A stretch of 64,000 nt of DNA from Callorhinchus milii (GCF_018977255.1 NW_024704755.1:15438001-15502000), one strand, 5' to 3'; positions 1 through 64,000 are shown, numbered from the stretch's first letter. Translations and numbers: made by a program. The notes: generated from the letters alone by a model not told the origin.

Positions 1-2888
1 TATATCATCTGGGTAAAATGCAGCCGTTTTACACACAAGCGTCAGAAATATTTTCGAATCTATTTCAGAATCTCTAGCGAACATCTTCAGCGGGGTAGGG
101 GGGACTGTAGGACAGACAATGCAGCAGAATCATATTATTGGTGATCAGTTGAAATATAAAATTTTATTCCCATTTAAATTGTATATGAATTGTTTCCTTA
201 CAATGTTATAACAAATAAGGTCCACCGAGATGCTGCCCTTCGTGAAAGTTGCTGTTGCAAGTTGTAGTTGTCATAACAAGGAATTGAGATTGGAATGGGA
301 AAAAACTGATCCTATTTGGGTGTTTAATTTGGAACAATGTTTAAGTTACGAAACATTAAAAGATGCCTTGTAGGAGGTCCTGCCTCTCTCCACCATATTA
401 GTAGCTGAATGAAAGTATTAACTATGATGAGAGAATGGGTAAACTTGATTTATATTTGATAGATCTGAGAAAGATGGGAGTTAACTTAACTGAGCTGTGA
501 ATGAACAATAACATATTGCAGGCGCATCCTTCCAGTAGAGGAATAAAAATAGGAGACACAATCAAACATTTTGGCTGAATCTGTTCGACGTGACATGAAA
601 TCTCTCCGTTCACATGTATTACTATACTATTATGGAATCCACTCCCAGAAGTGGCCTTAAATACAGATTGGAGTAGGATATTTAAAAGGGCGAAGGCTAA
701 ACATTTTAAGTGGTTGGAACGTGGTGGAGAAATTGGATTAAAAATTATGCCAACATTCTCGAGCAACGACAAGTGGAGATTTCACCTTTATTAGAGATAT
801 GAGCAAAACTTCCCCGTTAACACCAACATTCATTTTGTTCTGCTGTGTTTCTTCAAATTTAAGTTTCAAACCAACTCACAATAACTAGAATAGGTAATTC
901 AAAATCATTTCATGACCGTTGATGGAACATTGCTGTATGCAAATTGGTGCTAATTGTCCGAGTGCTTTTAAACATCTGCCTTTCATATACATCAGTAAAT
1001 TGTAAAAGTCTGGACCGTAGGTGCAAGAGATTCTGATTATCATCATTATTAATAGTAGCAGTGCTATTAGCATTAATTATTAGTATTATTGTTGTGTTAA
1101 TAATGATAAATCTTGCATTATTCTTATAATAATAATGTGGAGTCCTGTAGCTCAGTGGTTAGAGCACTCGCTTTGCAAGTGAGAGACCTGGGTTCAATTC
1201 CAGGCAGAGGACGAAACCTTGGGCACGTTTCCTTACTCCACACAGAGCCTAATAATAATCCCTCCAAAACAAAAAACAATAATAAATTGTCATTTTCAAT
1301 CTACGACTGTTTGTGGGACATTGCTGTGCGCAATTGGCTGCCGCGTTCACCCACAAATATACAGTCAATTCACTTTACAGTGTGTTCTGTGAAGCGCTTT
1401 GGGAAGTCCTCCCGATGTGAAAAGCGCTATATCAAGTGCAATGATTATTATTATTATTATTAATAATAAGATTGGAGTAGGATATTTAAAAGGGCGAAGG
1501 CTAAACATTTTAAGGGGTTAATAATAAGGATATTAAAATGAGTTTTGCATTCGATATGGATCCATTTGTCGAGATGATGTCTCAAAGCTTTATCATAGGA
1601 TTCACTGTAAGAAGTGGCAATTTTGTAGAAGAACACAGCAGCCAATTTTGCACACAGCTTGTGCCACAAATAGTCATGAAATGAGTAACCAACTTTTTTC
1701 TGGTGGAGTCGTCTGCCGGACAGGGGAGGGAAGGATCTCTCTTCTGGTTTCGAAAAGAACTACGGGATCGTTAACATTTACCTGAACATGCAGGAGGGAC
1801 CTCGCTTTAGCGCCTCATTCACATCAAGTAATAGAGCAATGTAAAGGTCTGGACCATAGTGCAAAAGATTCTGATTAATCATAATAATAATTCAACCTCA
1901 AGACAATGTTCCTAACATTGCTTTTGATTGTGTGCGCAGTGATCTTCATGTATTGACGTGGGACAATCTGAATAAATGTGTTCATCATAGAATAAAATCC
2001 TGGATAAATTAATATTCTACTTGCTGTGGTAGGACGGTTATAACTGTTTGAAAGCGTTACTAAAAACAATTATTAAGCAACTCAAATTCCCACTTTGCCG
2101 TGGGTATAAACCCGCTATCTCCCATTTGTACAATAACAAATGGGCAATACTTTTGATGAATATTGTATTGATCAAAATATTTCAGGTTAAAATAAAATAT
2201 TTCGCTGTGTGCTGTACGATCATAACTGTGGATGGGATTAAAAAAATGAAACAAGCAATTTGCCCATAACGATTTCAAAATGCCGCAATGTTCGTCTTTC
2301 AACATTATTCACATTATCAACTGTATTCACACTTACCATGTACAATTAAACGTGATCCAGTTCCATTTGCTGCTGTTTTCCCCTGACGGCTCACTGCACA
2401 GAGATAGACTCCTGAGTCGTGGAAACTCACATTTAGGAGCTGGAACGTTTTGAAGTTGAATATTTTCCTGTTGTCAGGACTTGTATGTAAATATTCGCGC
2501 TCTCCTCGCTTCCACCAGTAAAAGGTTAAATCTGAAGTGGACTGAATATCGGCAAACTTGCAGCCGAAGGTAATGCTTTCACCTTGATTTGCTATCTGTT
2601 CTACAGGATATTGGATCACTTTCATCGATGCATCCCCAGCAACTGTGAGAAAATAAATCAGAGCTATAATTAGTGATTATAGAGTTGAAGAAAGGTGACA
2701 AAATAACTATAGAGAAAAAGGGAGAGAAGGTGGAAGAATGAGAAAGAGGAAGATTTATGCATCCACTGAAACATTTTGAAACTCTTCATCAATATTGTTT
2801 TGTATGTAAGATCCGCTGAAGTAAAACAATTACCTGCGAAAATAATGCCCATCAGAGAAAGACAGGGGAACACATCACTCGCCACCAT
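1..2888 (-). CDS. Gene A: VJ-C1 Ig-superfamily receptor (NCR3/SIRP-like), 5' part only; continues beyond the left window edge
   Basis: Exons: leader 2834-2888 (MVASDVFPCLSLMGIIFA, donor gtaatt); V 2337-2642 (VAGDASMKVIQYP...C...WWK...DSGVYLC...ANGTGSRLIVH, cag/gtaagt); C1 start 104 to 1 (VPPTPLKMFARDSEIDSKIFLTLVCKTAAFYPDDI). All junctions are phase 1 and in frame. Confidence 0.85.
1142..1463 (+). mobile_element. Full-length tRNA-Ala(TGC)-derived DeuSINE (SacSINE1-like) with L2-type tail
   Basis: A box TAGCTCAGTGG, anticodon loop TTTGCAA, B box GTTCAATTCC, Deu-like core GGGACATTGCTGTGCGCAATTGGCTGCCGCGTT, tail GTGAAAAGCGCTATATCAA..(ATT)n. Near-identical copies at 18301, 21263 and 30562. Confidence 0.85.
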
Positions 2889-3166
2889 CGTGATCAGTTG
2901 CTGAGACTCACCTCAACATGTTATTGGGTGTAACAAACATTTGCTGATTGTCTAATATGAAATAATTCGCAGTGTCATGTGACTTCCCGTCTCCATGGTC
3001 AGAGATGAGTGACATACGATTTGCAAAGAGAATTGTGCCTTTCAATCTCTCATTGTGCCTGAGAAACACTCCTCAGATTAGCAGCAAAGAGAAGGGTTAC
3101 ATACATCTATATTATTCTGTGGTTTTGTTTTCTGCATTCTTGCATTAATTCTTCCTTATCATAGGT

Positions 3167-8978: not shown

Positions 8979-11900
8979 TCAATATTGTTCCAGATCCCTA
9001 GAGTTTTGGAGGAGATATTTATAAATCCATTGATTATTAGAGAATCATCCAATACAACAAAACGTAATTTCCACATTCTATGCCATTATGTCCCAGTTAC
9101 CAACGAACGACATGAATTTGTTTCCTTTTCATTGATAATTTTATGGGCTAACATGTTATGAGACTCTGTCCGGCGTGGAGGGCGCTATATAAATCCAAGT
9201 TGTTGTTGTTGTTGTTGGCTACGATATAAATACAATCATTATAAACAAAACAGTATTATTTTAAAACAAAGGAAGTCTTACCTTTCATGTGATTTGATTC
9301 TAATGTGGTCAACAATGAAGATGATCAACACTATCACTACCAAGAAACATAATATAAACCGAAAAAACATCACATCATCGGACATTCCGCGATAACCTGG
9401 AAAACAAATATCGGACTATAAAATGTTTAGAAGAAATCTACTGAATTTACTGAAATCTACTGTATTGGGAAAATCTGCATGTTAGTTAGTAGTTTATATT
9501 GGAAGTTACAATAAGGTGGACGAATATGAAATTGAAACTGTGCATTCAATTGAATGAAAATAATAGCGAATTTTCGTGATATTCAACGTGCAGGCAGTTT
9601 ATTAGTGGTGTTATAGAGAAACAGTTATGTGGTAGCAGTTCCCCTGAGAATGGGTGCTCAGCTTTAAGTGTTCCCGATATAAAGCCTGTTCCGACCCGAG
9701 CCATGGCGAGGTGGACGCCATCGTAATCAAAACTCATTGCATAGAATATCTACTGTAATATCGAAATATTTATAAAGCATCTCACAAAAGAGTTTTATTT
9801 TAAGTGCAGTGATTGTTGTTATAAAGGAAAAAGCAGCAGAAAATTTGATCCAAAATGGAACGGATTGATGAACGAATATTATTTGTATTTTATTTGTCAG
9901 TATGTATCAGTCCAAAAGTCCAATTTCTGATTTCAAAACCAATTGCAAGTTGAATTCGCAGGACTATTGCACTTTACCAAATGACAAAAACAGGAATTAA
10001 CATTTTGAAGGAGAGATATTTAGAGTCGAATAAAAAAGAACATACCCAATTTGAGATATTCTTGAATTCAAAGACTATAAATTTATAGTTGATTGTATAT
10101 ATAAGGAGTTTTCAGCGAGAAACTTACATGACTATAAATTGTAGCGTAAATTCAATTTCCAGCAACGAGGTGTTTAACAGAAAAAGATAGTAAGACAAGT
10201 AGGTATCCTACCAACCAATTCTGTGTTGGGTTTAGAAACGATGTACCTGGGAAAGGCTGGAATCCGGAGGGTGACCTGAGATACCGGACAGGTATAAACA
10301 GCCCCATTCTGAACAGGCTTAACTTTTGCCCTATGAATAATAACAATCATTATAATAAAAATCCATACATTTAAGGTAGCTCCTTATGATGGTGTTGAGA
10401 CTTCTCAAAGCACTTCATCAGTAAATCTGTAAATTGTAATTGTCTGGACCATAGGTGTGAGAGATTTTGATGAATAATAATCCTAATAATAATTCTTATC
10501 TTTGAGAGAGTTTTTCACATCAAGAGGACAGCTCAAAGCATTTCACATGTTTGGCGATTTTGCAGTTTGTAGAGGAACATATACTTCAACTACAAACAGT
10601 AGAACTACTGTAACAGTAGTTACAGCACATAGATTAGGACACAGCATGTGACTGCCAGGATGGTGGAAGGCGAACTAGACGGACCTTGGTCTTCTTTTGC
10701 CTAACAAATTCTTATATTCTAAAGCTCTTATAGCAGCCAGTTTCCACACAGCAATGGACCACAAATATCCATGAAATGAATAACCAAATTTATCTGGGGA
10801 TTTTGTTGGCCAGGACACTGGGAGGAAAAATCCCTCTTCTCTTTTTGAATAGTACTATGGTAAATTTTATATCCACCTGAACAGGCAGAAGGGACCTCGG
10901 TTTAACTTCTCATCCAAACCATGGGAAGCCAAGGAGCGCTCCCCTGGCACTGCATTGGACTGTCAGCGACGTGGGACAATTTGAATAAATGCATTCAGGA
11001 TGGAATAAAATATTAAATATGGTAAAGTTCTAGTTAGGGTGTATGGAGGGATGTAAGTGTTTGAAAGCATTGCTTAACATAATTATTATGCAACTCAATG
11101 CAAAATTATATTTATATAGGCCTTTCGTGTCAGGAGGATGTCCCAAGACACTGGATGGTCAGGAATTTGCACCCAAGCTGGGGGTCAGGATTGCAGAGAG
11201 TGGAGGGCAAGGAGGGTAGGAGGATGGCCGAAGGCTCTTTTAAAGTGGAATGTTTTGAGACACGCCTTGAAGGAGGCAAGATTATTGACCTGAAACGTTA
11301 ACCCATTTTCCTCTCTCCACAGATGTTGCCCGATATGCCGAGTGTTTCAGTGACTTCTATTTGAATTTCAGATTTCCAGCATTTTGCATTTTGTTTTATT
11401 ATGTCACTCAAATTCCCACTTTTCTGTGTGATATAAAACCTGCCGGCTCACATCAGTACAATAATGAAGGGGCAAAACTAGTTGAATAATATTCTATTGA
11501 TAAAAGTGTTTAATGTTCAAATAAAATCTGTTCCTGTTCCTGTGTATTGTGCAGAAAATTAAACAAATAATTTATCCATATCGGTTCTAAAATGTCGCAA
11601 TGCACCGCCTTTCAACATTCTCCATTACTATTGCATTCACACTTACCCTATACAATTAAACGTGATCCATTTCCATTCCCTGTTATTTTGCCCTGATGGA
11701 CCACTGCACAGAGATAGACTTCTGAATCGTGGATATTCACATTTAGGAGCTGGAACGATTTGGAATCAAATATTTTCCTGTTATCAGGTTTCGTGTGTAA
11801 GTATTCCCCCTCTCCTTGTTTCCACCAATAAAATGTTAGATTTGATCCTTGTTCATTATTGAAAAACACCTTGCAGGCGAATTTAACGTTTTCACCTTGT

Positions 11901-12189
11901 AATGCTTCCGGTTCTATGGGGTATTGAATCACTTTCATTGATGCATCACCAGCAACTGTCAAGAAATGAATTAACCTATATTAGTTGATTATACAAAGTA
12001 AGAAACAGGACATAATAAGCAGAGGGAGGGACTGAAAGATGGGAGAAAGTGAGACGGATATATTCACTGAACACATTTTGAAACTCTTCATCTATATCGA
12101 TTTGTATTCAAATTGATGTAGTAAAATTACATACCTGTGAGAATGATCCCCATTAGAGAAAGATAGGAGATCACATCGCTCACCATCAT
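8979..12189 (-). pseudogene. Activating-type VJ-(C1)-TM(Arg) receptor, disrupted (or a secreted single-V gene)
   Basis: Leader 12135-12189 intact. V 11647-11955 ends ...SRLIV-TAG just before the donor. Only the 3' half of C1 remains (10212-10320, KPVQNGAVYTCPVSQVTLRIP...); its acceptor and 5' half are deleted. TM exon 9282-9396 intact (GYRGMSDDVMFFRFILCFLVVIVLIIFIVDHIRIKSHE). Candidate terminal exon 8979-8997 (RDLEQY*). Confidence 0.75.
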
Positions 12190-15851: not shown

Positions 15852-18800
15852 TTACTTAGATCTTGGTTCCCTGCAGATAGCTGCTGCTGCTCCTCTGTGG
15901 TTTCTCACGTGGAGCTCTGCATACTCTGTATCCTTAACAGAACTTTTAGGTTTTCCTGTTTTTTTGGAGGGATGTAAATCCATAACATCACCTGACAGAC
16001 TGTTCCCGGCTGCCCTTTGCTTGGTCTGAAAAGTCAATATTTGAGAATTCAATTACATTAATTAGTTTCTCTAATTAGTCTTTAGATATCAGCTCGAATA
16101 TTTGCCAATTATTATTTGCAGCACCGCTTGCCACATAGTTCATTTGCTGAAGGCTCTGCTCCTCACAGAACTGACCTAAATAGAATCCAGCGGTCACAAT
16201 TCTGTTCCTTATTGGATTAGTTGCGCATCGAGAACAACCATGGGCTGGTAAAGAAAAGCGATAATCAGCCACGGTAGCAGTTGTTCAAGTGATCTGGGGA
16301 TAAGTATTTTTTATTGCTAAACAGTGGTGGCTTGCTGCCATCAATTCATAGACAAGGTCAGTGACACAGAAAGAAAAGATCAGTGGAGAAAGCAAGATTA
16401 ACCACAGAAATATACAAACTAGTCTATAATAAACAATGAAATGAGATTCACTGTATATAATGTAACAAGGAAAATTCTCAGATATACCTGGGCATACACA
16501 GTCTGCTCGCCTTGTTTTTTAGGTCTGGGAATTTTCTTGCCACAATTTAAATCTACTTCAGCATAGGTAACTGACTCATTCTGTGCTCCCTGTAAAACAG
16601 ATAGTGATAGATTGTTGGCTTCACTGGTCTGGAGATTGCTTGTTTACACATTAATCAAAATGCCCTTGAGAATAAATGTTTTCTCCTAAGTTTAAAATAT
16701 TTAACATTTCGCTTCCAACTATTTTACCAGTGAAAATCAACCAGTGTAGCAGTTGTTCATTGACCAACAGAAATATGGGATGTGCATTTCTGTTTATAAG
16801 TGATGTCCCAGTGCCTCATAGATTGACACACACATGTGGTCTTACACAAGAAAAATTACTATTTGACTATACAGTGACGGATTGTCATCATCATAACATG
16901 TCCCAGCACAGCATCAGAAAGTGAAGATTAGAGGACAAAGAAAGATTAACCACAAAAATGTACAAAGCATTTTACAGTAAACACTCTTTACCGAAGAAAG
17001 AAAATTCAGTTGGATAGAAAAGGTTTCTATTTTGATTTTGTGTTTCTCAGATGTACCTGGGCGTACACAGTCATCTCCTCTTGTCTTTTAGGACTTGGAG
17101 TTTTCTTGGAACTGGTTAAATTCAATGTAACATAAGCCACCGGCTCATTCTCTACTCTGCGCTTCGTCTATAAAAGAGAATGTGATCACAACACGAAAAA
17201 TACATGACATTTCTATTGCGCCATTCAAGCCGGGATGCCGTCCAAAAGCATTGATAGATTGTTGATTTCACTTTTCTGGAAATTTTTGTGGAAGTATTGA
17301 TTAGAAAGCCCTCGAGAATAAATATTTTCATTGAAGTTTACAATATTTAACATACAGCTTCCAAATATTTTGCAAGCAGTGTTACAGTTTTATTGATTAC
17401 TCTGTCATCAAATGCATGAAACTGGGTGCCTAAGGTTTTCAATAATGCATCGAGGCCACGTATTTGCACGTACAGAATATATTTTAAATGTTGTTATATT
17501 TTAATGGTGAACAATATCTTTCCATTACAAAAATTCTGTGTTCAGCTGAAACATCTGCTGAAATGAATTTAATAAATTTACCTGTTCTTCGCAATGGCCT
17601 GATCGGTTCTGGTTTTTGCGTGAGCCTTAGAAAGAAATTTAATAAGTAAAGAATTCACTCAATTTCCACATAAATAATTTCAAGTACATTTTGCTTAGAC
17701 TGAATAAAAAGTGAATCAAAGCCCTCAAACTGCCTGAGTCTGGTTTTAAAAAGGTATTCATCTTCCAGCAGAAAGCTGCCCTTTATTCAATATACACTCA
17801 TTAAAAACTGGATTAGAGTCACATAAGTCACATGATTACAACTTCTTAACACAAATCCAACAATCTCCTAAACTCTTATTCCTTCATACGTATTGCCATC
17901 CACGCTCTTATGCTCTGGAGCTTGCCCTGTTCTCTGGAACACCATCACTGAGTGCCTCCCATTCACTCTTTCCCGCGACTCCTTCAGAGAGTATAGATAA
18001 ATTGTGGTATGGAATATAAAATCGAAGAGGTAATGTTAAGATGAAAATTCATTCGTTAGACCAATTAGGATTGTTTACCCTGCTTCGGTTAGACATCAAG
18101 GAATGAATGGGGTGCCAAAGAGATTTACCAAGATGATACCAGGGGAGGTTGGTTTGCCCTATGAGCAGAGACTGGAGCAACTGGGACTTTTCCACTTGGA
18201 ACAAAGATTTGGGGGCGACCTGAGAGAGGTTTTCAAGATTATGAGGGGACTTGATAGCATCAATGCAGAATTTATTTCCAATGCTTAATATTTCAGTGAA
18301 GTCCTGTAGCTCAGTGGTTAGAGCACTCGCTTTGCAAGCGAGAGACCTGAGTTCAATTCCAGGCAGAGGGCGAAACCTTGGGCAAGTTTCCTTACACCAC
18401 ACGCCTAATAATAATCCCTCCAAAACCCAAAACAATAATAAATTGGTCATTTTCAATCTACGATTGTTTGTGGGACATTGCTGTGCGTAATTGGCTGCCG
18501 CGTTCGCCGACAAATATACAGTCAATTCACTTTACAGTGTGTTCTATGAAGCCCTTTGGGACATCCTCCCGACATGAAAAGCGCTATATCAAATGCAAGG
18601 ATTATTATTATTATTATTCAGTGGCAAGAAGGCAGTGGCTAAGATAGCTATAAAGTGGGAAATAGGGAGTAAGGAGATTTCTTTTCCACACACAGAGTAG
18701 TTAGGATATGGAATATACTGTTGGGTGTGATAGTTGAGGTGAAATGCACATTCACTTTCAAAAGGATACTGGAAGAAATAACTTAAAACGGGTTAACTGG

Positions 18801-37469: not shown

Positions 37470-37779
37470 GTGGAAATCAACGTACAGGGAGATCCTCAGT
37501 GATGTTATGGAGAAAACTTTATATATTACGTGGTAACTGTTCCTCTGAGACTGTTTACTCAGCTTCAAATGACCAGATAGAAGCGTCTTCCAACCCAAGG
37601 CATCGAGAAGTGGACGCCATCGTAACCAAACTGATCGCATTGGAAATATACTATCATATCCCAGTTTTAACTTCACTGCCATCTTTATTCCAATTGAGCG
37701 TTAAATCTCCCAGATTAAACGCAGCTGCTTTTGATCAATCTCTTTCAGATTTTCTGGGAAATGTTTTCAGCAATGCAGG
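37470..37779 (-). pseudogene. Decayed second C1 exon (relic)
   Basis: Matches the C1 5' half (CTGAAAACATTTCCCAGA..TGGAATAAAGATGGCAGTGAAGTTAAAACTGGGATA) with stops and a deletion. Paralogs at 62300-62543 and 9590-9755. Confidence 0.6.
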
Positions 37780-38169
37780 CTGTAGAATGTTATTTTACAA
37801 ATATTTCAATGGAGTATTCTGCAAGAAACTCACAAACTCACAAACTCGGACCCTAAATAATGGCTTCCAGCAACTGTCATCCCAAATCTCAGTTTCCTTA
37901 TCAGCTATCGGATGACGTATTCCTTCAGCTTGGTGGAAGGACCTTTACAGACAGCTTGCGACACACCAAGCACATCAATGTTCTCAGGATCCAAATCCAA
38001 TTCCATGTAAGTGTGTTATTCAGCACAAGATGCTTTATCCATACACTCGAGTCAGGTCTTAACACCCTTGGGTCATTCTTACATAAATAAAAGCAATGGA
38101 GGACGAAACACACTGAGATGCTACCCTGCATGAGGGGCGTTGTATCAATGCAAGATCATAAGGCAGTAC

Positions 38170-44514: not shown

Positions 44515-47500
44515 TTACTTGGTCTAAAAAGTCAATGTTTGAGAATTTAATTACATTAATTAGTTTTTCCTCAGTTGTCAGAAATCCACTCGAGTTTATT
44601 ATTTGCAGCACCGCTTGCAACATAGTTACATTAGAATACATAGAATACATTAGAATATACAGCACAGGAGCAGGCCATTTGGCCCAACTGGTCTATGCCA
44701 ATGTTTATGTTCCACATGAGCCCCCTCCTGAGAAAAGTGTGCAAGCGTGTTCAGCCTTTCCTCTCAGTTCTGGGATCATCCTCGTGAATCTCATTTGTAC
44801 CCTCTACATCCCTTCTTTAATGTGGGGACCAGAACTGTACACAATATAAGTGTGATCTATCGAAGGTTCTATAGAAGTTTACCATAACTTCCCTGCTTTT
44901 CATTTCTATCCCTCAAGAAATCAAGCCCAATGCCTGGTTTGCCTTTTTTATGGCCTTATTAAACTGCGTGGCTAGTTTTCGTGAATTGTGCATATGTAGC
45001 CCAAGATTCCTTTGCACCTCTAACGCATTTAGGTTTTCATTTTCCAGGATGTATGTGACTTCCTTATTCCTTCTCTCAAAATGTACCACCTCACATTTTT
45101 TTACATTGAAATGCATTTGCCATTTAAATGCCTATTCAGCAAGTTTATTAATGTCAAGCTGTAATCGTTTTGCAGTTCTCCTCTGTATTAACTATTTCCC
45201 CCTATTTGGTGTTGTCTGCGAATTTTGAAATCATTCTTCTGATTCCTGAGTCGAAACAGTGGTCCCAATACCGATCGCTGTGGAAAACCACTGCACATCC
45301 TCTGCCAATCATTTAATAAAGGAACTGATCCTCACAAAACTGAGCTAAACAGAATGCAGTGGCAACAATTCTGTTCCTTATTGGATTCGTTGCGCATCAA
45401 AACCAACCATGGGTTTGGAACGAAAAGTGAAAATCAGCCCAGGTAGCAGTTGTTCAAATGATTGCTAAACAATGGCAGATTGGTTCCATCATTTCATAGA
45501 CAAGTTCAGCGACACAGAGAGAAAAGATCAGTGGAGAAAGCAAGATTAACCACAGAAATATACAAGCTAGTTTATAATAAACAATCAAGTGAGATCCAGC
45601 ATACATAATGCAGTAAATTCTCAGTTATACCTGGGCGTACACAGTTCTCTCGTCTTGTTTGTTATTTCTGGGAGTTTTCTTGCAATGATTCAAATCCACT
45701 TTGGCATAAGTCACCGGCTCATTCTTTGCTCCCTGCAGCGTCTGTAAAACAGAATTGGATAGATCGTTGGCTTCACTACTAGTCTGGAGAGTCTTGTATA
45801 AGTATTAATCAAAAATGCCTGTAAGAATATTAAATATTTAACATATAGCTTCCAAATATTTTACCAGTGAAAATCACCAGTGTAGCAGTTGTTCATTGAA
45901 TTATGGAAATATGGGCTGTGCATTTCCCAGTGCCTCATAGATTGACACAGACAATACATAATCTTACACAAGAAAAATAACTATTTGACTACACAGTAGC
46001 GGATTGTTACCATCATATCACAGCCCAGGATGGCGCCAGAAAGTGAAGATTAGAGGACAAGGAAAGATTAACCACAAAAATGTACAAACTATCTTACAGT
46101 AAACACTGAAGTGAGTCCCACTCTTTACCGAAGCAAGAAAGTTCAATTGGATAGAAAAGGTTTCTGTTTTGATTTACTGTTTTGATATACCTGGGCGTAC
46201 ACAGTCCTCTCCTCTTGTTTTTTAGGTCTTGGAGTTTTCTTGGAATTATTCAAATTCAATGCAACATAAGCCACCGGCTCGTTCTCTACTCCGCGCTTTG
46301 TCTGTAAAACAGAATGTGATCACAACAAGAAAAATACATGACATTTCTATTGTGCCATGCAAGTTGGAATGACATCCTATGGCACTGATAGGTTGTTGAC
46401 TTTACCGTTTTGAAAATTGTTGTGGAAGTACTGATCAGAAAGGCCTCGAGAGTAAATCTTTTCATTGAAGTTGACAATATTTAACATATAGCTTCCATAT
46501 GTTTTACAAGCAGTTATAGTTTTATTAATATTCTGTCATCATTGCATGAAAGTTTGCGCGTAATGTTTCAATAATACATTGAGGCCATGTAAATGCATGT
46601 ATGGAATATATTTAAAATGTTGTTATTTCTTAATCGTGAACAATATCTTTCCATTACAAGTATTCTGTTTTCAGCTGAAACGTCTGCTGAAATGATTTTA
46701 ACACATTTACCTGTTCTTCGCAATAGCCCGATCTGTTCTGGTGACTGCGTGAGCCTTAGAAAGAAATTCAATACATGAAGTATTCACTCAATATCCACGT
46801 AAATAATTTCAAATATATTTTGTTCTGACCAAATGAAAAGCGATTCGAAGCCCACAAATGGCCAAAGTCTGCTTGTAAAAAACGTAGTCGTCTTCCAGAA
46901 AACTGCCATTCTTTATTGACGATTAAGGCTGCCCATCTCAACAGCATCAATCCACGAGACATGAATAGTGCTATAGAAATGTGAATTTATATTGTACCAT
47001 TAAATATTTCCATACATCCCTATGGTAAATATTTCCCTTACTCGCTTGTTTCCCTATTTAAAAAAAATGAACTCTTTTGTCACATTTTCCAGGAATATCT
47101 TGAAAATGGCACGCAATCTACTGTTGAGAAATCGTGTTTTACCACATTGGGAACAGAATCCTGAGTTCTACAATTGCATTTCTGCTGATACCTGATGCTT
47201 TTTTTTTCACCATTATATACACAATCTGGATTTTGGTATTTCGGGAACAATTTCTAAGTTTGCTGATTAGAAAAAAGTGCTAGAGTGAAGAAGATCGAAA
47301 TTTGATTGAAGAGATATAAGAGCCAGCAGATTGCACAGAGACTGAGAGATGGCAGGTGAAACTGGACATTTTGGGATGTGAAAGGCGGAATCTGCATTTT
47401 CTAAAATAATGCATTTTCTAAAATTTATTGATGGTAGCGGTAAGCGGAAAAACAGGTGAATGACACGTGAATTCTTTGAAGAGCGAACAGAGAGACTATG

Positions 47501-50500
47501 GGCTAAATTGCCTTCTGTGCTGTAAATTTCTCTCGTTCAACCACAACAGATTTCATATATTCTTTGTATGGAAATTTCCGATGAAGCATGCAGTTAAATA
47601 TATACAGGGTGAGTTTCTGTGAGGATATTTGCATTTGTCACATCAATCACAACACATTAATCATTGACGCAACTATACAGGATGTCAGGTTTTCGTCACT
47701 GTCACATCTAATTTATTAAATTAATTGTTCTAATAAAAAACATTTACAATTAACTTAAATAAAATAATATATCTCACCTTTCCTTTTGTTTAATTGGCAT
47801 TGTTTCCCAACGATGATCAAAAGCAGCAGAAATACCAGCCCTCCAGCTGTACCTCCAGCGATCCATTTATAATGATCCTTAGCTACAAGAACAGCATAAG
47901 CTGAATGTGTTAGTGATCCCAGGAATGAGGTACAGCTTCAGTCACTGTGCAGTGCATCAGATTGGTGGAAGTTATCAAATGACGAAAATGTAATAACCGA
48001 TTTCAAAGGAATTATTTTCAATGGAGGTTCGGCAAGAAAACGATTATGATGACAATTTTCTGAATAAATAAATGTAAATATATTTTGAAAAACAATTCAG
48101 TTAACAATAAATGTCTTCAGGAAATTACCTGCGTAGGAATTAGAAACTGTGTTTAAATCAATTGACACACAATTTCCAGTAATAAGGTGTTTAACAACAA
48201 AAAGACATTAACGAAAGTAGGCATCTTACCTTCCAGTGCTGTGCTGGGGTTAGAAACGGTGAACTTGACAACCGCTGGAACCCGAAGGCTGATATGTGAT
48301 ACCAGACAGAGATAAACAACTCCGTTCTGTACAGACTGTGTCTCTTCCATAGAACTCGAAACTTTGTAAAGTCCCTTTGAATTCTTTTCTTTGGTGTCAT
48401 TTATCCCAGTTTTAACTTCATTGCCATTTTTATACCAAGTCAGCGTTACATCTCCCGGAAAAAACTCAGCCGTTTCACACACAAGTGTCAGAGACTTTGA
48501 TGAATCTCTTTCAGAAGCTCTGGGGAATATCTTCAGTGGGGTTGGGGGGACTGTAGGGCAGACAGTGGGGCAGAATCACGTTACTGGTGATCAGTTGAAT
48601 TATAAAACTTTATTTCACTTAAATTGTATAATAACTTTTCTTGGAACTTTATAACAAGGAATCTGGATTGTAACGGCAAGAAAGTGCAGTTTTAAAAATT
48701 GTTCGCGTCTTTTGTTTGGAATGATGTGTTCAGTTTAGGAGTTATAGTAGCCTTGGAGGGGCTAAAGAAGTGAAGGAGTTCATAATCTTAATATTGTGGT
48801 CTCAGAAATGAAATGGAACCCTTCTCATCACATGGAATATTGTGATGTTGTGTACTCCAGTCCCAAAATTGGCCTTAGATGCAGAGTTAAGTTGGATATT
48901 TATATTTATAAGGGTCATAGATAATACTTTTAAAGCATTTTGAGAGTGGTGGATAAACTGGACTAAAATCTCTGGCACCATTCTAAAGCAACAACAACCT
49001 GAATATATATAACGTTCTTCACACAGGATAGTGACTTTGGATGCAGATTTAAATGGAGATTTCACAATGAATGGAGACATAAGCAAATCCTCCCCATTCA
49101 CACCAACATTCATTTTGTTCTGCTGTATTTCTTTAAATTCTATAAGTTTCCAACTAATTGATGACAGTAACAGAAGGTAATTCAAAACCGTTTCATGCTA
49201 TTTGTGGAATATTGATGTGCGTAAAATGTTCAGGTTTTAGACATATATGAAAATCAGTAAATTGTAATTGCCTGGCCGCAGGTGCAAGAGGTTCTGATGA
49301 ATAATAATCCTAATAATAATTCTTATATTCGATGGATCTTTTCATGCCGAGAAGATCGTCTCAAAGCATTTCACAGGATTCACTGTAAATTGTGGCGATT
49401 TTGCATTTTTGTGGAGGAATACAGCAGCCAGTTTTCCACACAGCAATGTACCACAGATAGTCATGAAGTACATACCCAAATTTAACTGGTGGATTCATTG
49501 TCCAGAACACAGCGAAGAAGACTAACACTTCTATTTACAACTAGTACCACGGGATCTTTAACATCTGTAGGATTCTGTAATTATTGTGTTAAATAATATC
49601 TCAAATGCTTGGAATTGCGAAACATATTCCTGCTTCTAAAGAAGGAAGATCATGATTACGAGTTAAACAACTCTAAACGTACAAAAATACTTGGATACTT
49701 TTGGGTGATATTGAACTGGAAACTGTACAGAAATACCTTGATACTTTTTGATGGAAAAATACTTGGATTAAAATGGACGTTAAATTGGACATTGCTCCTC
49801 TATCTTTCCCGCAGCATTTGATGTGATCAACTTGAATCATTGTGAACTGCGTTATAACCGGACCCTTAAGCATAATTGGATGTATACTTTTAATTACTTA
49901 TAACCATTATTAATCTGAATGAATAAAGATTGATTAATTGTACAATATTTGTGACAGTACTTACTTCACCGCAGTGTCATGAATTTAAAGTAACCGTTAC
50001 ATATCCACCTCAACAATCACAAGGGACCTCGGTTTAACGTTTCACCCAAATAGTGGGAATCCACAGATCGATTCCCTCGCATTGCATTGAATTATCAATC
50101 TCCATACATGATTTCAGGATAGAACCAATAATAATCCCTCCAAAACCAAAAACAATAATAAATTGGTCATTTTCAATCTACTTTGTGGGACATTGCTGTG
50201 CGCAATTGGCTGCTGCGTTCTCCCACAAATCTACAGTCAATTCACTTTACGGTGTGTTCTGTGAAGCACTTTGGGCGTCCTCCTCACGTGAAGAGCGCTA
50301 TATCAAATGCAAGGATTATTATTTTATTAACCAAATATCAGAGTAAAGTTCTAGTGATTGCGGTATGGAGGGAAATAAATGTTTGCAAGCATTGCTTAAC
50401 GCAATTATTCAGCAATTCAACTTCCCATTTTGCTGGGGTTGATATGCTCGCCGGCTCAGATCAGTACAATAACGAAGGGGGAAAACTTTGGTTGAATAAT

Positions 50501-51218
50501 ATTCTGTTGTTCAATGTGTTTCATATTGAAATTAAACCTGTTCCTGTGTGCTGTGGAATCTTGTTTTTGGATGAGAGTAGAGAATTAAACAAATCATTTA
50601 CCCCATATCGATTTCACAATGTGGCAATACTCACCTTTCAACATTCTCTGTCACTATTGTACTCACACTTACCGCGTACAGTTAAACGTGATCCAGTTCC
50701 ATTTCCTACTGCTTTCCCCAGTTGGATTACTGCACAGAGATAGACACCTGAGTCGCGGAAAGTCACATTTAGGAGCTGGAATGTTTGGGAATTGAATATT
50801 TTCCTGTTGTCAGGTTTTGTGTTCAAGTATTGACTCTCTCCTCGTTTCCACCAGAAAACTGTAATGTCTGAACTTTGTTGATCAGTGACAGCCCAGCAGG
50901 TGAATTTAACGTTGTCACCTCGCAATGCTGTCGTTGCTATAGGATATTGACGCACGTCCATCGATGCATCACCTGGAACTGTCATGAAATGAATTAACCT
51001 ATAATTAGTGATTAAACAGAGGAATAAACGCGACAAAATCAAATGCAGAGAGCGAGAGAAAGATGGGAGAAAGTTCGAGGAAAAAAAGTATTTTCGATAC
51101 AAATTTTAGAACTTTTCATCTATATCATTTTGTATTAAAATGTGCTGCAGTAAAGTTACATACCTGTGGCAATAATCCCTATTAGACAAATATAGGATAT
51201 CACATCACTCGCCATCAT
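44515..51218 (-). CDS. Gene D: inhibitory-type VJ-C1-TM receptor, 353 aa, truncated by a nonsense codon in the last exon
   Basis: Exons: L 51164-51218; V 50673-50978; C1 48230-48550; TM 47778-47882; cyt1 46711-46754; cyt2 46191-46301 (VAYVAL); cyt3 45631-45741 (VTYAKV); cyt4 starts at 44523 with ACC AAG TAA. The ancestral frame stays open to 44350 (TAYAEL). Confidence 0.85.
44628..45305 (-). mobile_element. CR1 3' fragment in the last intron of gene D
   Basis: ORF 44913-45116: NVKKCEVVHF...VQRNLG...ATQFNKAIKKANQALGLIS. Absent from the equivalent intron of gene B. Confidence 0.7.
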
Positions 51219-54200: not shown

Positions 54201-54759
54201 TGATTCATATCAAAAATACCTTTGGCAATTAATTATGGATTATAAATATAGCCAGCAATATTTTTCAAGAGATTTCCAAAAGATATATAATTTATTAATA
54301 AATGCAGTTATGGTTGAATCAGATGCTGAAAGAAAATCAGCACAGAACTAAGATGCAAATTACTTGGTATGGTGGAAAACTACATCAAATATATACCAAT
54401 ACCCGTTTCTGCGCCTGTTGCTTTATTTAGAATCCTGCAGTTAGCTGCTGCTGCTCCTCCGTGGTTTCTCAAATGTAGTTCTGCATACTTTTTATTCTAA
54501 AAGGTACATTTAGGTTTTCCTGGTTTCTTGGAAGTTTATAAATCCAGAAAAGCACACGTTAGATTGTTCCCGGCTGACCTTTGCGTGGTCTGAGAAGGCA
54601 ATGTTTGAGTACTTAATTACATTCATTTGTTTTTCTTCAGTTTTCAGAAATCTCCTCAAATATTTGCAAATTTGAATATGTTACAGCCTTGCCACATAGA
54701 TGTCTAGTTACTCAACTATAACTAGTTATGATAAGTTACTCCTCCTTACAGAACTCAGA

Positions 54760-57688: not shown

Positions 57689-58313
57689 NNNNNNNNNNNN
57701 NNNNNNNNNNNNNNNNNNNNNNNNNNNNNNNNNNNNNNNNNNNNNNNNNNNNNNNNNNNNNNNNNNNNNNNNNNNNNNNNNNNNNNNNNNNNNNNNNNNN
57801 NNNNNNNNNNNNNNNNTGTCTCTCTGTCCCTCCCCCCTCCCCCTCTCTCTTTCTCTCTCTCTCTGTCCCTGTCTCTCTCCCCCTCTTTCTCTGTCCCCCT
57901 CTCTCTCTTTGTCGCTCTCTGTCCCTCTCCCCCTCTTCCNNNNNNNNNNNNNNNNNNNNNNNNNNNNNNNNNNNNNNNNNNNNNNNNNNNNNNNNNNNNN
58001 NNNNNNNNNNNNNNNNNNNNNNNNNNNNNNNNNNNNNNNNNNNNNNNNNNNNNNNNNNNNNNNNNNNNNNNNNNNNNNNNNNNNNNNNNNNNNNNNNNNN
58101 NNNNNNNNNNNNNNNNNNNNNNNNNNNNNNNCCTCTCTCCCTNNNNNNNNNNNNNNNNNNNNNNNNNNNNNNNNNNNNNNNNNNNNNNNNNNNNNNNNNN
58201 NNNNNNNNNNNNNNNNNNNNNNNNNNNNNNNNNNNNNNNNNNNNNNNNNNNNNNNNNNNNNNNNNNNNNNNNNNNNNNNNNNNNNNNNNNNNNNNNNNNN
58301 NNNNNNNNNNNNN
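57689..58313. other. Assembly gaps/masked bases inside a CT-rich tract
   Basis: N runs at 57689-57816, 57940-58131 and 58143-58313, flanked by (CT)n. Confidence 0.95.
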
Positions 58314-58999
58314 TCTCCCTCTTACTCCCTCTCTTTCACTTTCTCTCTTTTTTCCAGCGATGTCACCTTGACGTTCCTTGTTGTTTTCCCACTGTTTGTA
58401 TAATCTTCGCTCTCCTCCCGAATCAGTGACTGCGGAGCTGCGCTCGGCTTTCCACCTCCTGCTCTGTCCCCGCTCTCCTCCCCGAATTCTGCTCTTCAAT
58501 GTGTTTCATATTGAAATAAAACTTGATCCTGTGTGCAGTGCCATCATAACTTTGTATCAGGTCGGAAATTAAACAAACAGTTTGCCCATAACGCTTTCAA
58601 AATGCGCCAATGCATCGCCTTTCAACATTCTCTGTTATTACTGTGTTCACACTTACTATATACAGTTAAACTGTGATCCAGTTCCATTTCCTACTGCTAT
58701 TCCCTGAAGGACCACATCACTGTGGGGAGACCTAGAAAAATATAAAATAATTATTTAAATGTAAAAATAATAATTGTTAGATTTGGTTTCACACCTTTCA
58801 ACTTGAGAGGACATCTCAATAATCTTCACAAGATAAATGTGGTTTTGTGAGAGAACATGGCAGACAGTTTGCACACAGCAATGACCCAATAACTGCCATT
58901 ATCTTATTTGGGTGGTGGTTGGCCAGAACACTGGGAGAAAGGACAGCTTCCTCCCAACCACCAGTTTCTACCACTGCCAAGATAGTGAGTCGCCCAAGC

Positions 59000-59505: not shown

Positions 59506-59507
<2 letters not shown>

Positions 59508-61697: not shown

Positions 61698-63549
61698 TCA
61701 ATCGTGTTCCAGATACCTGGAGAATTGTAGGAGATATTTATATAACCACTGATTATTCGAGAATCCTCCAACATAGCAAACAGCAATTTCCACATTCTAA
61801 ATTATATTGTCGCGATTACCAACAACAACATTAACTTGTTTCCTTTTCATTGATAATGTTATGGGTTATAACATAAATGTAATAATTGTAAATGAAAAGA
61901 CACTGTCATTTTGAAACAAAGAAAGCCTTACCTTTCAAGCGGTTTAATTCTAATGTGGTCAACAATGAAGATGGTCAACACTATCACTACCAAAAAACAT
62001 AATATAAACCGAAAAATCATCATAACGTCGGACATTCCACCATAACCTGGAAAACAAATATCGGACTGTAAAACATTTACATGAAATCTACTCAATAATT
62101 AGCTGTATTGGGAAACTGCACATGTTCTTAGTTAATTGCTATTGGAAGCTGCAATGAGGTGGACGGATATTATAAACTGTGAATTCAATTGATCGAAAAT
62201 ATCAAATGCAAGGATTATTATTATTATTGTAACAGCGAATTGTGGTGGAAATCACCGCAGTGGCAGTTTCTCAGATATATATTCTGTTGTAGCAGTTCCC
62301 CTGAGACTGTTTTCTCAGACTCAAATGTACCAGATATAATGTGTGTCCCGACCCGAGCCATCGAGAGGGGACACCGTCGTAACCAAAACTCATTGCATTG
62401 GAAATCTACTGTCATATCCCAGTGTTAACTTCACTGCCGTCTTTATTCCAACTGAGCGTTACATCTCTCACGTAAAACACAGCCGTTTGGATGAATCTTT
62501 TTCCGATTCTCTGGGGAATATCTTCAGTGGTGTTGTGGGGCAATGTGGGGTTGAAAACGGAGCAGAATCACATTACCAGTGATCAGTGGGAAGATTAAAC
62601 TTTATTCCCAGGATTTGAATTGGATATGATTTGTTTCCTTGCAACATATTAACTGGGAAGATCATGTCGCAAGTTGTTGTGACATTACAGGGAATTAGGT
62701 AAGAAATATGAGCTTTTACAGGAAGACAAAATACATTCCATTCCAGACAGAGACATTGGAAATGGAGGCCATCATAGTCAATCATATTATCATTTGATAT
62801 ATCATCGTGCAGAAACGCCTCGAAAATACATCAAAAATGTAGGTTATTTAAAGTGCAGTAAATGTTGATATATAGGCAAAGGCTACAGCTGATCTGCACC
62901 ACACAATGCTACTGAGAGGAGGTTACCAAATGACCAGAATGTAACACCCAATTCAAAGTGAAGTATTTATCACAGAATAAGTACAAAATAGAACATAAAG
63001 CACATTTGATGTCCTCAGTTCTGACTGAGAAGAGTCGAAGGATTTGAAACTTATTAAAATAATTTAGCAGAGTAAGAGACGAAATAGTAAATTGAAATAA
63101 TGACATGTAAAGTTGAACACTATGCAGTATTCCGCAAGTGAACTATATGATTATAATTTTCTGTTTCAATTAATGGAAAAATATTTTGAATAACAATTTA
63201 GTTGACACCGATTGTCTTGAGGTTATTGGCAAATTACCTTTGTTGGATTCAGAAAAAGTGTAGACCGCAATGGCTGGAATCCAGAGGGTGACATGAGATA
63301 CCAGACAGGTATAAACAGCCCCATTCTGTGCAGGCTGTGTCTCTTCCATAGAGCTCGAAGCTTTGTAAAGTTCCTTTGAATTCTTTTCTTCAGTGAAATG
63401 TATCCCAGTTTTAAATTCTTTGCCATCTTTATTCCAGGTGAACGTTACATCTCCCGGGTAGAACTCAGCCGTTTCACACACAAGAGTCAGAGACTTTGAT
63501 GGATCTCTTTCAGAATCTCTGGGGAATATCTTCAGTGGGGTTGGGGGGA
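61698..63549 (-). CDS. Gene E: activating-type (V)-C1-TM(Arg) receptor, 3' part; leader and V expected beyond 64000
   Basis: C1 63238-63549 open (VPPTPLKIFP...CETAEFYPGD...YTCLVSHVTL...SESNK). TM exon 61932-62046 open (GYGGMSDVMMIFRFILCFLVVIVLTIFIVDHIRIKPLE). Terminal exon uncertain: 61698-61716 (RYLEHD*) or from 61266 (RRSQEETVSGD*). Confidence 0.75.
62300..62543 (-). pseudogene. Decayed second C1 exon (relic) between C1 and TM of gene E
   Basis: TPLKIFPRESEKDSS...WNKDGSEVNTGI*...YLVHLSLRKQ. Acceptor mutated (cacat). The upstream intron copy matches the true C1 acceptor flank. Confidence 0.65.
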
Positions 63550-64000
63550 CTGTAGGGCAGACAGTGGGGCAGAATCATGTTACTTGTGATCAGTTGGAAT
63601 ATAACATTTGATTCACATTTAAGTTGTATAATAACTGTTTCCCAGGAAATTATAACAAGGAATCTGGATTGTAATGGCAAGAAAGTGCAGTTTTACAAAT
63701 GTGTTTGTGTCTTTTGTTTTGAATGATGTGTTCAGTTTAGGTGATATAATAGCCTTGGAGGTGCTAAAGAAGTGAAGGAATTCATAATCTTAATATTGTG
63801 GCTCTCAGAAATGATGCGGAACCCTTCTCATCACATGGAATATTGTGAAGTTGCGGAATCCAGTCCCACAAGTGGCCTGAGATTCAGAATCAAGTTTCAC
63901 CATCAATAGAGATATAAGCAAAACCTCCCCATTCACACCAACATTAATTTTGTTCTGCTATATTTCTTTAAATTTTATAAGTTTCCAATTTACAAAAGTT

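What the first reader, a model, noticed from the sequence alone, without database searches (positions are those of the whole stretch)
1..64000. Paired activating/inhibitory family of non-rearranging VJ-C1 antigen-receptor-like genes
Seen in sequence: each locus has a single V exon with the J-like G strand already joined (GNGTGSRLxV, donor directly after, no RSS found), spliced in phase 1 to a C1-set exon (C..FYPG..W..Y.C.V.H). Closely related C1 exons are coupled either to an uncharged TM plus a Tyr-motif tail (B, D) or to an Arg-containing TM plus a tail of about 15 residues (E and two relics). Established knowledge: this is the logic of paired receptors (KIR, LILR, SIRP alpha/beta, teleost NITR), and germline VJ-C1 is the proposed architecture of antigen-receptor precursors (PRARP/VJC1-type genes); the V end resembles NKp30. 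Inference: an expanded, possibly undescribed NK/myeloid paired-receptor system. Automated annotation would probably split it into NCR3-like, NCR3LG1-like or SIRP-like hits.
Basis: partly seen in the sequence, partly recalled or inferred. Interest (0 to 1): 0.92.

Follow-up and report, generated by a model that had tools for sequence, protein, structure and literature searches.

The report
Elephant-shark paired V-C1 immune receptor cluster
This stretch of elephant-shark DNA holds a tandem cluster of cell-surface immune receptor genes built like one chain of an antibody or T-cell receptor but never rearranged, coming in "brake" and "accelerator" versions; the gene family is shared by all sharks, rays and chimaeras and has no clear counterpart in other vertebrates.

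Summary
All genes lie on the minus strand of Callorhinchus milii scaffold MU249845.1. Two genes are complete: G50 (identical to a RefSeq model) and G24 (407 aa, 8 exons, all AG/GT). Each has leader, one V exon with an in-frame J motif (GxGxxLxV), a phase-1 splice to a C1-set exon, an uncharged TM and a tail with two canonical ITIMs. No RSS exists anywhere in the window.

Three copies of an Arg-containing TM exon with an 11-residue tail are present. Only one (E) follows an intact C1 exon in a compatible phase, and its V exon lies off the window. The other two are relics. The assembly gaps sit in a CT-rich repeat between genes and touch no exon.

The family has at least 83 protein clusters, all chondrichthyan, including true pairs (catshark P0205/P0207, near-identical ectodomains by eye, opposite TM and tail).

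V and C1 each form a well-supported clade whose sister group is unresolved, so the NKp30 resemblance is weak. Cell type, MHC linkage and whether the shark NCR3 papers already describe it could not be settled. Verdict: new variant of a known kind.

The parts
51164..51218 (-). G50 leader exon (MMASDVISYICLIGIIAT, phase 1 donor)
   Evidence: exact match to RefSeq model P0001
50673..50978 (-). G50 V exon with in-frame J motif GNGTGSRLTV
48230..48550 (-). G50 C1-set exon
47778..47882 (-). G50 uncharged TM exon (WIAGGTAGGLVFLLLLIIVG)
44515..46754 (-). G50 cytoplasmic exons: cyt1 46711-46754, cyt2 46191-46301 (ITIM VAYVAL), cyt3 45631-45741 (ITIM VTYAKV), cyt4 44515-44523 (early TAA)
25135..25189 (-). 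G24 leader exon
24643..24948 (-). G24 V exon with in-frame J motif; 100% identical to the V part of Ensembl fragment P0013
20837..21160 (-). G24 C1-set exon
19955..20062 (-). G24 uncharged TM exon
15852..17625 (-). G24 cytoplasmic exons: cyt1 17582-17625, cyt2 17057-17167 (ITIM VAYVTL), cyt3 16488-16589 (ITIM VTYAEV), cyt4 15852-16025 (TEYAEL, stop)
63238..63549 (-). Gene E intact C1-set exon (its V exon lies beyond the window)
62415..62551 (-). Decayed first half of a C1 exon (frameshift, stop, acceptor lost) between E's C1 and its R-TM exon
61928..62046 (-). Gene E Arg-containing TM exon, GYGGMSDVMMIFRFILCFLVVIVLTIFIVDHIRIKPLER*, phase 1 acceptor
37184..37785 (-). Dead activating unit: C1 relic 37657-37785 (stop, deletion) and intact-looking R-TM exon 37184-37302; leader relic at 40633-40671
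9278..12189 (-). G11 pseudogene: leader 12135-12189, V 11647-11955 ending in TAG before the donor, C1 relic 10216-10326, R-TM exon 9278-9396
1..2888 (-). G2.6 (LOC103185949, models P0007/P0010), cut by the window edge: leader 2834-2888, V 2337-2642, C1 1-104
58668..58715 (-). V-exon relic (only the F-G strand end, VVLQGIAVGNGTGSQF)
54434..54607 (-). Relic of the last cytoplasmic exon (stops); a second such relic at 29911-30003
57689..58313 (.). Three assembly gaps inside CT-rich simple repeat, intergenic between E and G50

Best explanation
The window is part of a cluster of more than 250 kb on Callorhinchus milii scaffold MU249845.1. The cluster holds tandemly duplicated type I membrane receptors whose ectodomain is one germline-joined VJ domain plus one C1-set domain.

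The duplication unit appears to alternate an inhibitory gene with an activating gene. The inhibitory genes (G50, G24, G2.6) carry an uncharged TM and a tail made of three internally duplicated exons with canonical ITIMs and ITSM-like motifs. On ligand binding and tyrosine phosphorylation these should recruit SHP-1/SHP-2-type phosphatases and dampen the cell (inferred).

The activating form replaces TM and tail with a single exon. That exon encodes a TM with an Arg in its outer third and an 11-residue tail. It should signal through an ITAM adaptor with an Asp-bearing TM, FcR-gamma or CD3-zeta type by the position of the Arg (inferred).

In this window the activating lineage is decaying: two units are dead. 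One (E) looks rescued by recombination that placed an inhibitory-type C1 exon, and presumably its V, upstream of the old R-TM exon.

Shown here: exon structure, phases, open frames, motifs, absence of RSS, family distribution, and paired ectodomains in other species. Inferred: signalling partners, ligand binding through the V domain, and expression in immune cells.
For: - Exon and phase structure and full open frames for G24 and G50; G50 is identical to RefSeq P0001.
- Pfam C1-set E = 2e-18 and V-set E = 4.6e-8.
- AlphaFold model with pLDDT above 90 over most of both domains and a TM helix; the best Foldseek matches are Ig light chains.
- No RSS anywhere in the window.
- ITIMs VAYV(T/A)L and VTYA(E/K)V.
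- Three conserved R-TM exons with phase-1 acceptors. E's C1 joined to its R-TM exon gives an open frame.
- Segmental duplications: 15.7-29.9k resembles 44.2-54.5k, and 7.5-9.8k resembles 35.6-37.8k and 60.2-62.5k.
- E's C1 is closest to G24's C1 (dS 0.11, against 0.22-0.23 for the other pairs).
- The same R-TM module occurs in C. milii P0008, Heptranchias P0031/P0051 and catshark P0205/P0206. Catshark P0205 and P0207 have near-identical ectodomains by eye and opposite TM and tail.
- At least 83 family clusters, all chondrichthyan. A crude census gives 41 models with ITIM or ITSM and about 15 with a charged TM and no motif.
Against: - I have no transcript data. Junctions rest on gene models (RefSeq, Ensembl) and on sequence logic.
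- E's V exon is outside the window, and no database model joins E's C1 to its R-TM exon.
- The nearest E-like RefSeq model elsewhere (P0004) reads through the C1 donor and lacks any TM exon.
- The stop of the R-TM exon overlaps a consensus donor, so the true tail may differ.
- dN/dS of 0.4-1.07 is based on few sites and does not separate relaxed from diversifying selection.
Confidence: 0.8

Rival explanations
1. These genes are simply the shark NCR3 (NKp30) family already described by Flajnik et al. 2012 and Kinlein et al. 2021, so nothing is new.
For: - The G strand GxGTxLxV resembles NKp30. phmmer matches NKp30 at E = 5e-4 over residues 64-98.
- The family V profile gives 30.0 bits to human NKp30.
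- C1-skipping isoforms P0033 and P0247 are named or look NCR3-like.
- An Arg lies near the outer end of the activating TM, as in NKp30 (my knowledge).
Against: - The papers I could read describe NCR3 as a VJ-domain gene and present UrIg as the novel MHC-linked VJ-C1 gene, without mentioning a C1 in NCR3 (PMC12227049; PMC10751288).
- In catshark the curated NCR3 lies at 13.5 Mb of NC_052158.1, between DDAH2 and AIF1. The family member P0020 lies at 81.08 Mb of LR744038.1, where the NC_052158.1 gene list shows a different gene on the other strand.
- PD-L1 V outscores NKp30 and the V tree is unresolved.
- I could not read the two key papers.
Confidence: 0.3
2. The family is the cartilaginous-fish representative of the SIRP family (VJ plus C1-set domains, ITIM alpha forms and charged-TM beta forms).
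For: - The best non-chondrichthyan hits of the full-length family profile are mammalian SIRP-beta-1-like proteins (119, 119 and 110 bits). The next hit is a salmon Ig at 57 bits.
- RefSeq names most members SIRP-alpha- or SIRP-beta-like.
- The tail pattern LTYAxLDL...TEYAEL resembles the SIRP-alpha ITIM pairs (my knowledge).
- SIRP-alpha D1 scores 26.4 bits and D3 scores 45.6 bits against the domain profiles.
Against: - The family has two Ig domains, not three.
- The SIRP score is inflated because two C1 domains both match, and the word prefilter limits which candidates were scored.
- The C1 profile prefers B7-H6 C and Ig lambda C over SIRP D3 and D2.
- The trees do not place the family with SIRP D1, D2 or D3.
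- The activating charge is an outer-third Arg, not a mid-TM Lys.
Confidence: 0.2
3. They are B7H6-like ligands (B7 family V-C molecules) rather than receptors.
For: - The family C1 profile scores human B7-H6 C highest in the panel (54.8 bits, against 50.0 for Ig lambda C).
- PD-L1 V is the top V hit (34.4 bits).
- Several members are named NCR3LG1-like, CD276-like or PD-L1-like.
Against: - Human B7-H6 V scores only 12.4 bits.
- The V has a canonical J motif.
- The ITIM tails and charged-TM forms are receptor hallmarks.
- The C1 tree puts the family among true C1-set domains, with B7-H6 C not resolved as sister.
Confidence: 0.07
4. They are germline-joined immunoglobulin light-chain or TCR genes, which are known in cartilaginous fishes.
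For: - V-C1 architecture with a joined VJ.
- The best Foldseek matches are Ig light chains.
- Ig lambda C scores 50 bits.
- Some models are named Ig-lambda-1-like.
Against: - No RSS remnant.
- TM plus ITIM or Arg-TM exons.
- V scores only about 21 bits to V-lambda or V-kappa, against roughly 140-150 bits for family members.
- The family is a separate, well-supported clade in both the V and C1 trees.
- The joined structure is shared by all orders of cartilaginous fish.
Confidence: 0.03

Closest known systems
SIRP family (SIRP-alpha, -beta, -gamma)
   Same: - Non-rearranging VJ-type N-terminal domain followed by C1-set domain(s).
- Paired inhibitory (ITIM pairs recruiting SHP-1/2) and activating (charged TM, short tail) members with similar ectodomains.
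- Best non-chondrichthyan profile hits.
   Different: - One C1 domain instead of two.
- The activating charge is an Arg near the outer end of the TM rather than a mid-TM Lys for DAP12.
- No resolved phylogenetic sister relation.
- Ligand unknown.
NKp30 / NCR3, including the shark NCR3 family (Kinlein et al. 2021, not readable here)
   Same: - Single-exon VJ domain with GxGTxLxV.
- Arg in the outer TM of the activating form.
- C1-less splice isoforms of family members look like NKp30 and are named NCR3-like.
   Different: - The main isoforms carry a C1 domain.
- Most members are inhibitory.
- V similarity is not specific (PD-L1 V scores higher).
- The catshark family member is not at the curated NCR3 position.
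PRARP genes (Fu et al. 2019; bony fish to birds; from my knowledge of the abstract)
   Same: [quoted passage not shown]
   Different: - PRARPs were reported from bony vertebrates, as a pair of genes rather than a large paired cluster.
B7-H6 (NCR3LG1)
   Same: V-C ectodomain. Its C domain is the best-scoring panel member against the family C1 profile (54.8 bits).
   Different: - B7-H6 V is very different (12.4 bits) and lacks the J motif.
- B7-H6 is a ligand without ITIM or charged-TM pairing.
KIR, LILR, teleost NITR (paired receptor clusters)
   Same: - Tandem clusters evolving by duplication, exon exchange and pseudogenisation.
- Activating members arising from inhibitory ones.
- High dN/dS.
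   Different: Different domain types: C2/I-set in KIR and LILR, V or V-I in NITR. None has a C1-set domain.
UrIg / UrIg2 (Flajnik et al. 2023, 2025)
   Same: Cartilaginous-fish, non-rearranging VJ followed by C1-set domains. UrIg2 C3 is among the top PDB sequence matches of the C1 (E = 3e-16).
   Different: - UrIg has three C1 domains. UrIg is described as secreted only, and both UrIg and UrIg2 as forming homodimers.
- No TM, ITIM or paired forms.

Membership tests
Paired activating/inhibitory IgSF receptors (functional class) | Closely related ectodomains coupled to opposite signalling modules | tested here: met
   E's C1 against the inhibitory G24 C1: dS 0.11, 90% nucleotide identity. Catshark P0205 and P0207 have near-identical ectodomains by eye with R-TM and uncharged TM respectively.
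Paired activating/inhibitory IgSF receptors (functional class) | ITIM ([SIVL]xYxx[IVL]) in the tail of the inhibitory member | tested here: met
   G24: VAYVTL, VTYAEV. G50: VAYVAL, VTYAKV.
Paired activating/inhibitory IgSF receptors (functional class) | Basic residue in the TM and short tail in the activating member | tested here: met
   VMMIFRFILCFLVVIVLTIFIV plus 11 residues, in three copies.
Paired activating/inhibitory IgSF receptors (functional class) | Recruitment of SHP-1/2 and association with an ITAM adaptor | not testable with these tools
   Needs biochemistry.
NCR3 / NKp30 | Single-exon VJ-type V domain (GxGTxLxV) | tested here: met
   G112-x-G114-x-x-L117-x-V119 is invariant or nearly invariant in 30 family members. 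V and J are contiguous in the DNA.
NCR3 / NKp30 | V domain specifically closest to NKp30 | tested here: inconclusive
   30.0 bits to NKp30, but 34.4 to PD-L1 V and 26.4 to SIRP-alpha D1. The tree is a polytomy.
NCR3 / NKp30 | Ectodomain of one V domain plus stalk, no C domain | tested here: not met
   A C1-set exon is present in all main models. Only the alternative isoforms P0033 and P0247 lack it.
NCR3 / NKp30 | Location in the MHC class III region next to AIF1 | tested here: inconclusive
   The C. milii MHC is not assigned to a scaffold in Verissimo 2023. Catshark P0020 is not at the curated NCR3 position.
SIRP | VJ-type D1 followed by C1-set domains | tested here: met
   Pfam V-set plus C1-set.
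SIRP | Three Ig domains (V-C1-C1) | tested here: not met
   There is one C1 exon per gene.
SIRP | Sequence orthology to SIRPs | tested here: inconclusive
   The best outgroup hits are SIRP-beta-1-like (119 bits), but the trees are unresolved.
PRARP | VJ-C1-TM with cytoplasmic ITIM | tested here: met
   Architecture of G24 and G50.
PRARP | Sequence relationship to chicken, fish or frog PRARP | not tested
Rearranging antigen receptors / germline-joined Ig | RSS flanking V and J, or close identity to Ig/TCR V and C | tested here: not met
   No RSS. About 21 bits to V-lambda and V-kappa. The family is a separate clade.
B7 family (B7H6) | B7-type V domain | tested here: not met
   B7-H6 V scores 12.4 bits and a J motif is present.
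B7 family (B7H6) | C domain related to B7-H6 C | tested here: inconclusive
   Top panel score of 54.8 bits, only about 5 bits above Ig lambda C. Not resolved as sister in the tree.

The most novel reading that the evidence does not exclude
This family may be a surviving membrane-bound, non-rearranging VJ-C1 lineage close to the stock from which NKp30 and the SIRP/B7H6-type C1 domains arose. NKp30 would have arisen by loss of the C1 exon, a step already prefigured by the in-frame C1-skipping isoforms in C. milii.

If so, the V exons and C1 exons of single genes could have been counted separately as 'NKp30' and 'B7H6' genes in early fragmented shark assemblies. The family would then be an antigen-receptor-like chain that already used paired ITIM and adaptor signalling before, or beside, RAG-mediated rearrangement.
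Probability: 0.15. Interest if true: 0.8.

Novelty: new variant of a known kind. Interest (0 to 1): 0.55.

Why it matters
Non-rearranging genes that join a VJ domain to a C1 domain are the sought-after relatives of the gene that the RAG transposon split to create antibodies and T-cell receptors. Only a few kinds are known: SIRP, tapasin, PRARP and UrIg.

This one differs in three ways. It is membrane-bound. It is expanded across all cartilaginous fishes. It already runs the inhibitory/activating paired logic of NK and myeloid receptors.

If it proves distinct from the described shark NCR3 genes, it gives comparative immunologists two things. One is a new, tractable receptor system in the oldest jawed vertebrates. 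The other is a concrete test of whether NKp30, SIRP and B7H6 domains share a V-C1 ancestor.

If it is the same as those genes, the finding is a correct but ordinary re-annotation.

Tried and rejected
1. A profile search of 1.84 billion representative proteins with the V-domain alignment was swamped by titin- and hemicentin-like giants with dozens of Ig domains. It said nothing about outgroups.

2. PDB profile and sequence searches with the V and C1 domains were likewise dominated by multi-domain proteins and Fabs. I replaced them with a small panel scored locally. Only NKp30, B7-H6, SIRP-alpha and PD-L1 in that panel were checked against the PDB.

3. Could the activating and inhibitory forms P0008 and P0003, which share a V, be splice variants of one gene? 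No R-TM exon lies within 10 kb of the P0003 gene, so this is unsupported.

4. Is P0004 the database model for gene E? No. It lies about 95 kb away and has no TM exon.

5. RSS-like CACAGTG next to the V relic at 58.7k: there is no nonamer, and heptamer counts in the window equal chance (6 found, about 8 expected).

6. MHC linkage through the supplement of Verissimo et al. 2023: the C. milii MHC scaffold is not assigned, and the catshark comparison was indirect.

7. Literature: Kinlein 2021, Flajnik 2012, Ohta and Flajnik 2015 and Flajnik 2023 were not held. Full-text searches for PRARP, NS344823, shark NKp30 and paired receptors in sharks found nothing relevant.

8. A Pfam scan of seven long non-family ORFs found nothing.

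Full report
**What is there.** The window has 39-40% G+C and five N runs: two single letters and three gaps at 57689-58313. Every family exon lies on the minus strand. A tblastn search with one V and one C1 peptide finds:
- four full V exons (2.6k, 11.9k, 24.9k, 50.9k) and one V stump (58.7k);
- four C1 exons (0.1k, cut by the window edge; 21k; 48.5k; 63.5k);
- three C1 relics (10.3k, 37.7k, 62.5k).

In each V exon the Cys codon is followed by 8-9 codons and then GGA AAT GGA ACT GGA TCA CGT TTA ACT GTA, one more codon, and G|GTAAGT. The J-like strand is therefore part of the V exon and the donor is in phase 1. C1 exons start CAG|TC and end in phase 1. TM exons are phase 1 at both ends. A scan for heptamer, 12/23 spacer and nonamer found nothing on either strand. 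Bare CACAGTG/CACTGTG heptamers occur six times, about the chance number.

**Gene models.** G50 assembles from eight exons into exactly the 353-aa RefSeq protein P0001, named 'tyrosine-protein phosphatase non-receptor type substrate 1-like'. G24 assembles the same way into a 407-aa open frame with AG/GT at every junction. Both have the TM sequence WIAGG(A/T)AGG(G)LVFLLLLII(I/V)G. Their tails are built from three homologous exons carrying VAYV(T/A)L and VTYA(E/K)V, which are canonical ITIMs. They also carry TVYAQ repeats and, in G24, TEYAEL. G50's last exon has a TAA at its third codon. G2.6 (models P0007 and P0010, LOC103185949) runs off the left edge of the window.

**The Arg-TM module.** Three copies of a single exon encode GY(G/R)GMSD..M.FRFILCFLVV.VL.IF.VD.IRIK...*. 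Each has a ttttccag|GT phase-1 acceptor. The stop TAA overlaps a consensus AG|GTAAG donor.
- The 62.0k copy follows the intact C1 at 63.5k. Joining 63238 to 62046 keeps the frame open to the stop. Between them lies half a C1 exon with a frameshift, a stop and no acceptor.
- The 37.2k copy follows only a broken C1.
- The 9.3k copy follows a broken C1 and a V exon whose last codon is TAG.

In this window the activating lineage is therefore mostly dead, and E's V exon cannot be seen.

**Gaps.** The N runs are flanked by, and interrupted with, CT-rich simple sequence. They lie between E's R-TM exon and G50's leader, among relics (a V stump at 58.7k and a tail-exon relic at 54.6k). No intact exon abuts them. 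I did not attempt to fill them.

**Duplication history.** Self-alignment shows 15.7-29.9k resembling 44.2-54.5k at 72-89% identity. It also shows 7.5-9.8k resembling 35.6-37.8k and 60.2-62.5k. This means alternating inhibitory and activating units. G24 and G50 have nearly identical V exons (dS 0.06) but more diverged C1 exons (dS 0.22). E's C1 is closest to G24's (dS 0.11). Homology between E and the inhibitory genes stops near the 3' end of the C1 exon. This mosaic pattern fits exon exchange or unequal crossing-over, as in KIR and LILR clusters. dN/dS is 0.4-1.07 on few sites.

**Identity and distribution.** The V of G24 is 100% identical to the V part of an Ensembl C. milii fragment (P0013). 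G50 maps to MU249845.1:15,482,515-15,489,218 of GCA_018977255.1. Paralogues P0003 and P0004 lie about 125 kb and about 95 kb away on either side. A profile of 30 members retrieved 83 clusters, all from cartilaginous fishes: chimaera, cow shark, bullhead, carpet, ground and cat sharks, sawfish, skate, stingrays and mantas. These were followed by three mammalian SIRP-beta-1-like proteins (119-110 bits) and a salmon Ig (57 bits). RefSeq names for family members include SIRP-alpha-like, SIRP-beta-1-like, Ig lambda-1-like, tapasin-related-like, NCR3LG1-like, CD276 homologue, PD-L1-like, MHC class II-like and TCR-beta-like. The C1-less isoform P0033 is named NCR3-like.

**Pairing outside the window.**
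- The R-TM module recurs in C. milii P0008, Heptranchias P0031 and P0051, and catshark P0205 and P0206.
- Catshark P0205 (R-TM) and P0207 (uncharged TM) have near-identical ectodomains by eye.
- A second activating-like design is seen in P0015, P0020 and P0028: an Arg at the start of the Gly-rich TM with a truncated tail.
- A crude census gave 41 ITIM/ITSM models, about 15 charged-TM models without motifs, and 32 truncated or other models.

**Fold and affinities.** Pfam gives C1-set 2e-18 and V-set 4.6e-8. The AlphaFold model of P0001 has pLDDT above 90 over most of both domains and a TM helix at 223-260. The top 50 Foldseek hits are antibody Fab chains, mostly light chains, at 19-27% identity.

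Domain profiles scored against a panel of human domains:

| Profile | Best | Second | Third | Also |
|---|---|---|---|---|
| V | PD-L1 V 34.4 bits | NKp30 30.0 | SIRP-alpha D1 26.4 | V-lambda 21.6; B7-H6 V 12.4 |
| C1 | B7-H6 C 54.8 bits | Ig lambda C 50.0 | SIRP-alpha D3 45.6 | DR-beta-2 44.0 |

In maximum-likelihood trees the family is one clade (V 94/96, C1 99/99). Its sister group is unresolved. The C1 sits among true C1-set domains, apart from the CD80, CD86, PD-L1 and B7-H3 C domains. I therefore cannot file the family under NKp30, SIRP or B7H6.

**Literature.** The papers I could read treat NCR3 as the MHC-linked VJ gene of sharks. They present UrIg as the novel MHC-linked VJ-C1 gene and UrIg2 as its paralogue beside the Ig/TCR genes (PMC12227049; PMC10751288). 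Their supplement places five white-shark NCR3 genes between AIF1 and DDAH2, and one catshark NCR3 at 13.5 Mb of NC_052158.1. The catshark family member P0020 maps to 81.08 Mb of LR744038.1, which does not match that gene list. This hints, but does not prove, that the V-C1 family is separate from the curated NCR3 genes. The primary NCR3, B7H6 and PRARP papers were not available.

**Verdict.** The paired VJ-C1 reading is well supported at the family level and partly supported in the window. The NKp30 link, cell type, MHC linkage and novelty remain open.

Noticed in passing
window 1137-1461, 18296-18618 (+); 21255-21592, 30557-30893 (-): Four repeat copies begin with a tRNA-like sequence (Rfam tRNA, 38-52 bits). 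They are 90-93% identical in pairs, so they are tRNA-derived SINEs. One sits in the V-C1 intron of G24, just upstream of its C1 exon.
   Followed up: partly
window 9278-9281, 37184-37187, 61928-61931 (-): In all three R-TM exons the stop codon TAA overlaps a consensus splice donor (GAA AG|GTAAG). The short tail could alternatively be spliced to an unseen downstream exon, reminiscent of the alternative tail exons of human NCR3.
   Followed up: no
window 24643-24948 vs 50673-50978, and 20837-21160 vs 48230-48550: G24 and G50 have nearly identical V exons (dS 0.06) but much more diverged C1 exons (dS 0.22). This suggests gene conversion of the V region or a mosaic origin.
   Followed up: partly
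window 58718-58724 (-): A perfect CACAGTG heptamer lies directly 5' of the V-exon stump. It has no nonamer and sits where the Cys-Ala-Val codons would be. Heptamer counts in the window are at chance level.
   Followed up: yes
window 44353-44523 (-): G50's last cytoplasmic exon has a TAA at its third codon. The protein therefore lacks the final TxYAEL motif that G24 and paralogues keep, although the rest of the exon is still recognisable.
   Followed up: yes
proteins P0033 and P0247 (C. milii, same scaffold): RefSeq isoforms skip the C1 exon in frame, giving V-TM-ITIM proteins. One of them is the model named 'NCR3-like'.
   Followed up: partly
L004 10001-20183 (MU249845.1 about 15.59-15.60 Mb): A paralogue has intact leader, V and C1 exons. 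It has no detectable TM exon and decayed tail exons. RefSeq models it as a 229-aa secreted 'Ig lambda-1 light chain-like' protein that reads through the C1 donor.
   Followed up: partly
proteins P0015, P0020, P0028 (Mustelus, Scyliorhinus, Hypanus): A second activating-like design exists in elasmobranchs: an Arg near the start of the same Gly-rich TM used by inhibitory members, plus a truncated tail. Activating forms therefore seem to have arisen more than once.
   Followed up: partly
window about 6.1-6.8k, 27.4-27.8k, 52.8-53.1k, 57.6-59.6k: Long CT-rich simple repeats read as SLSLSL-type ORFs and give strong local GC skew. The assembly gaps are inside one of them.
   Followed up: no
window 4436 and 37035: Two isolated single N letters, both outside any family exon.
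   Followed up: no
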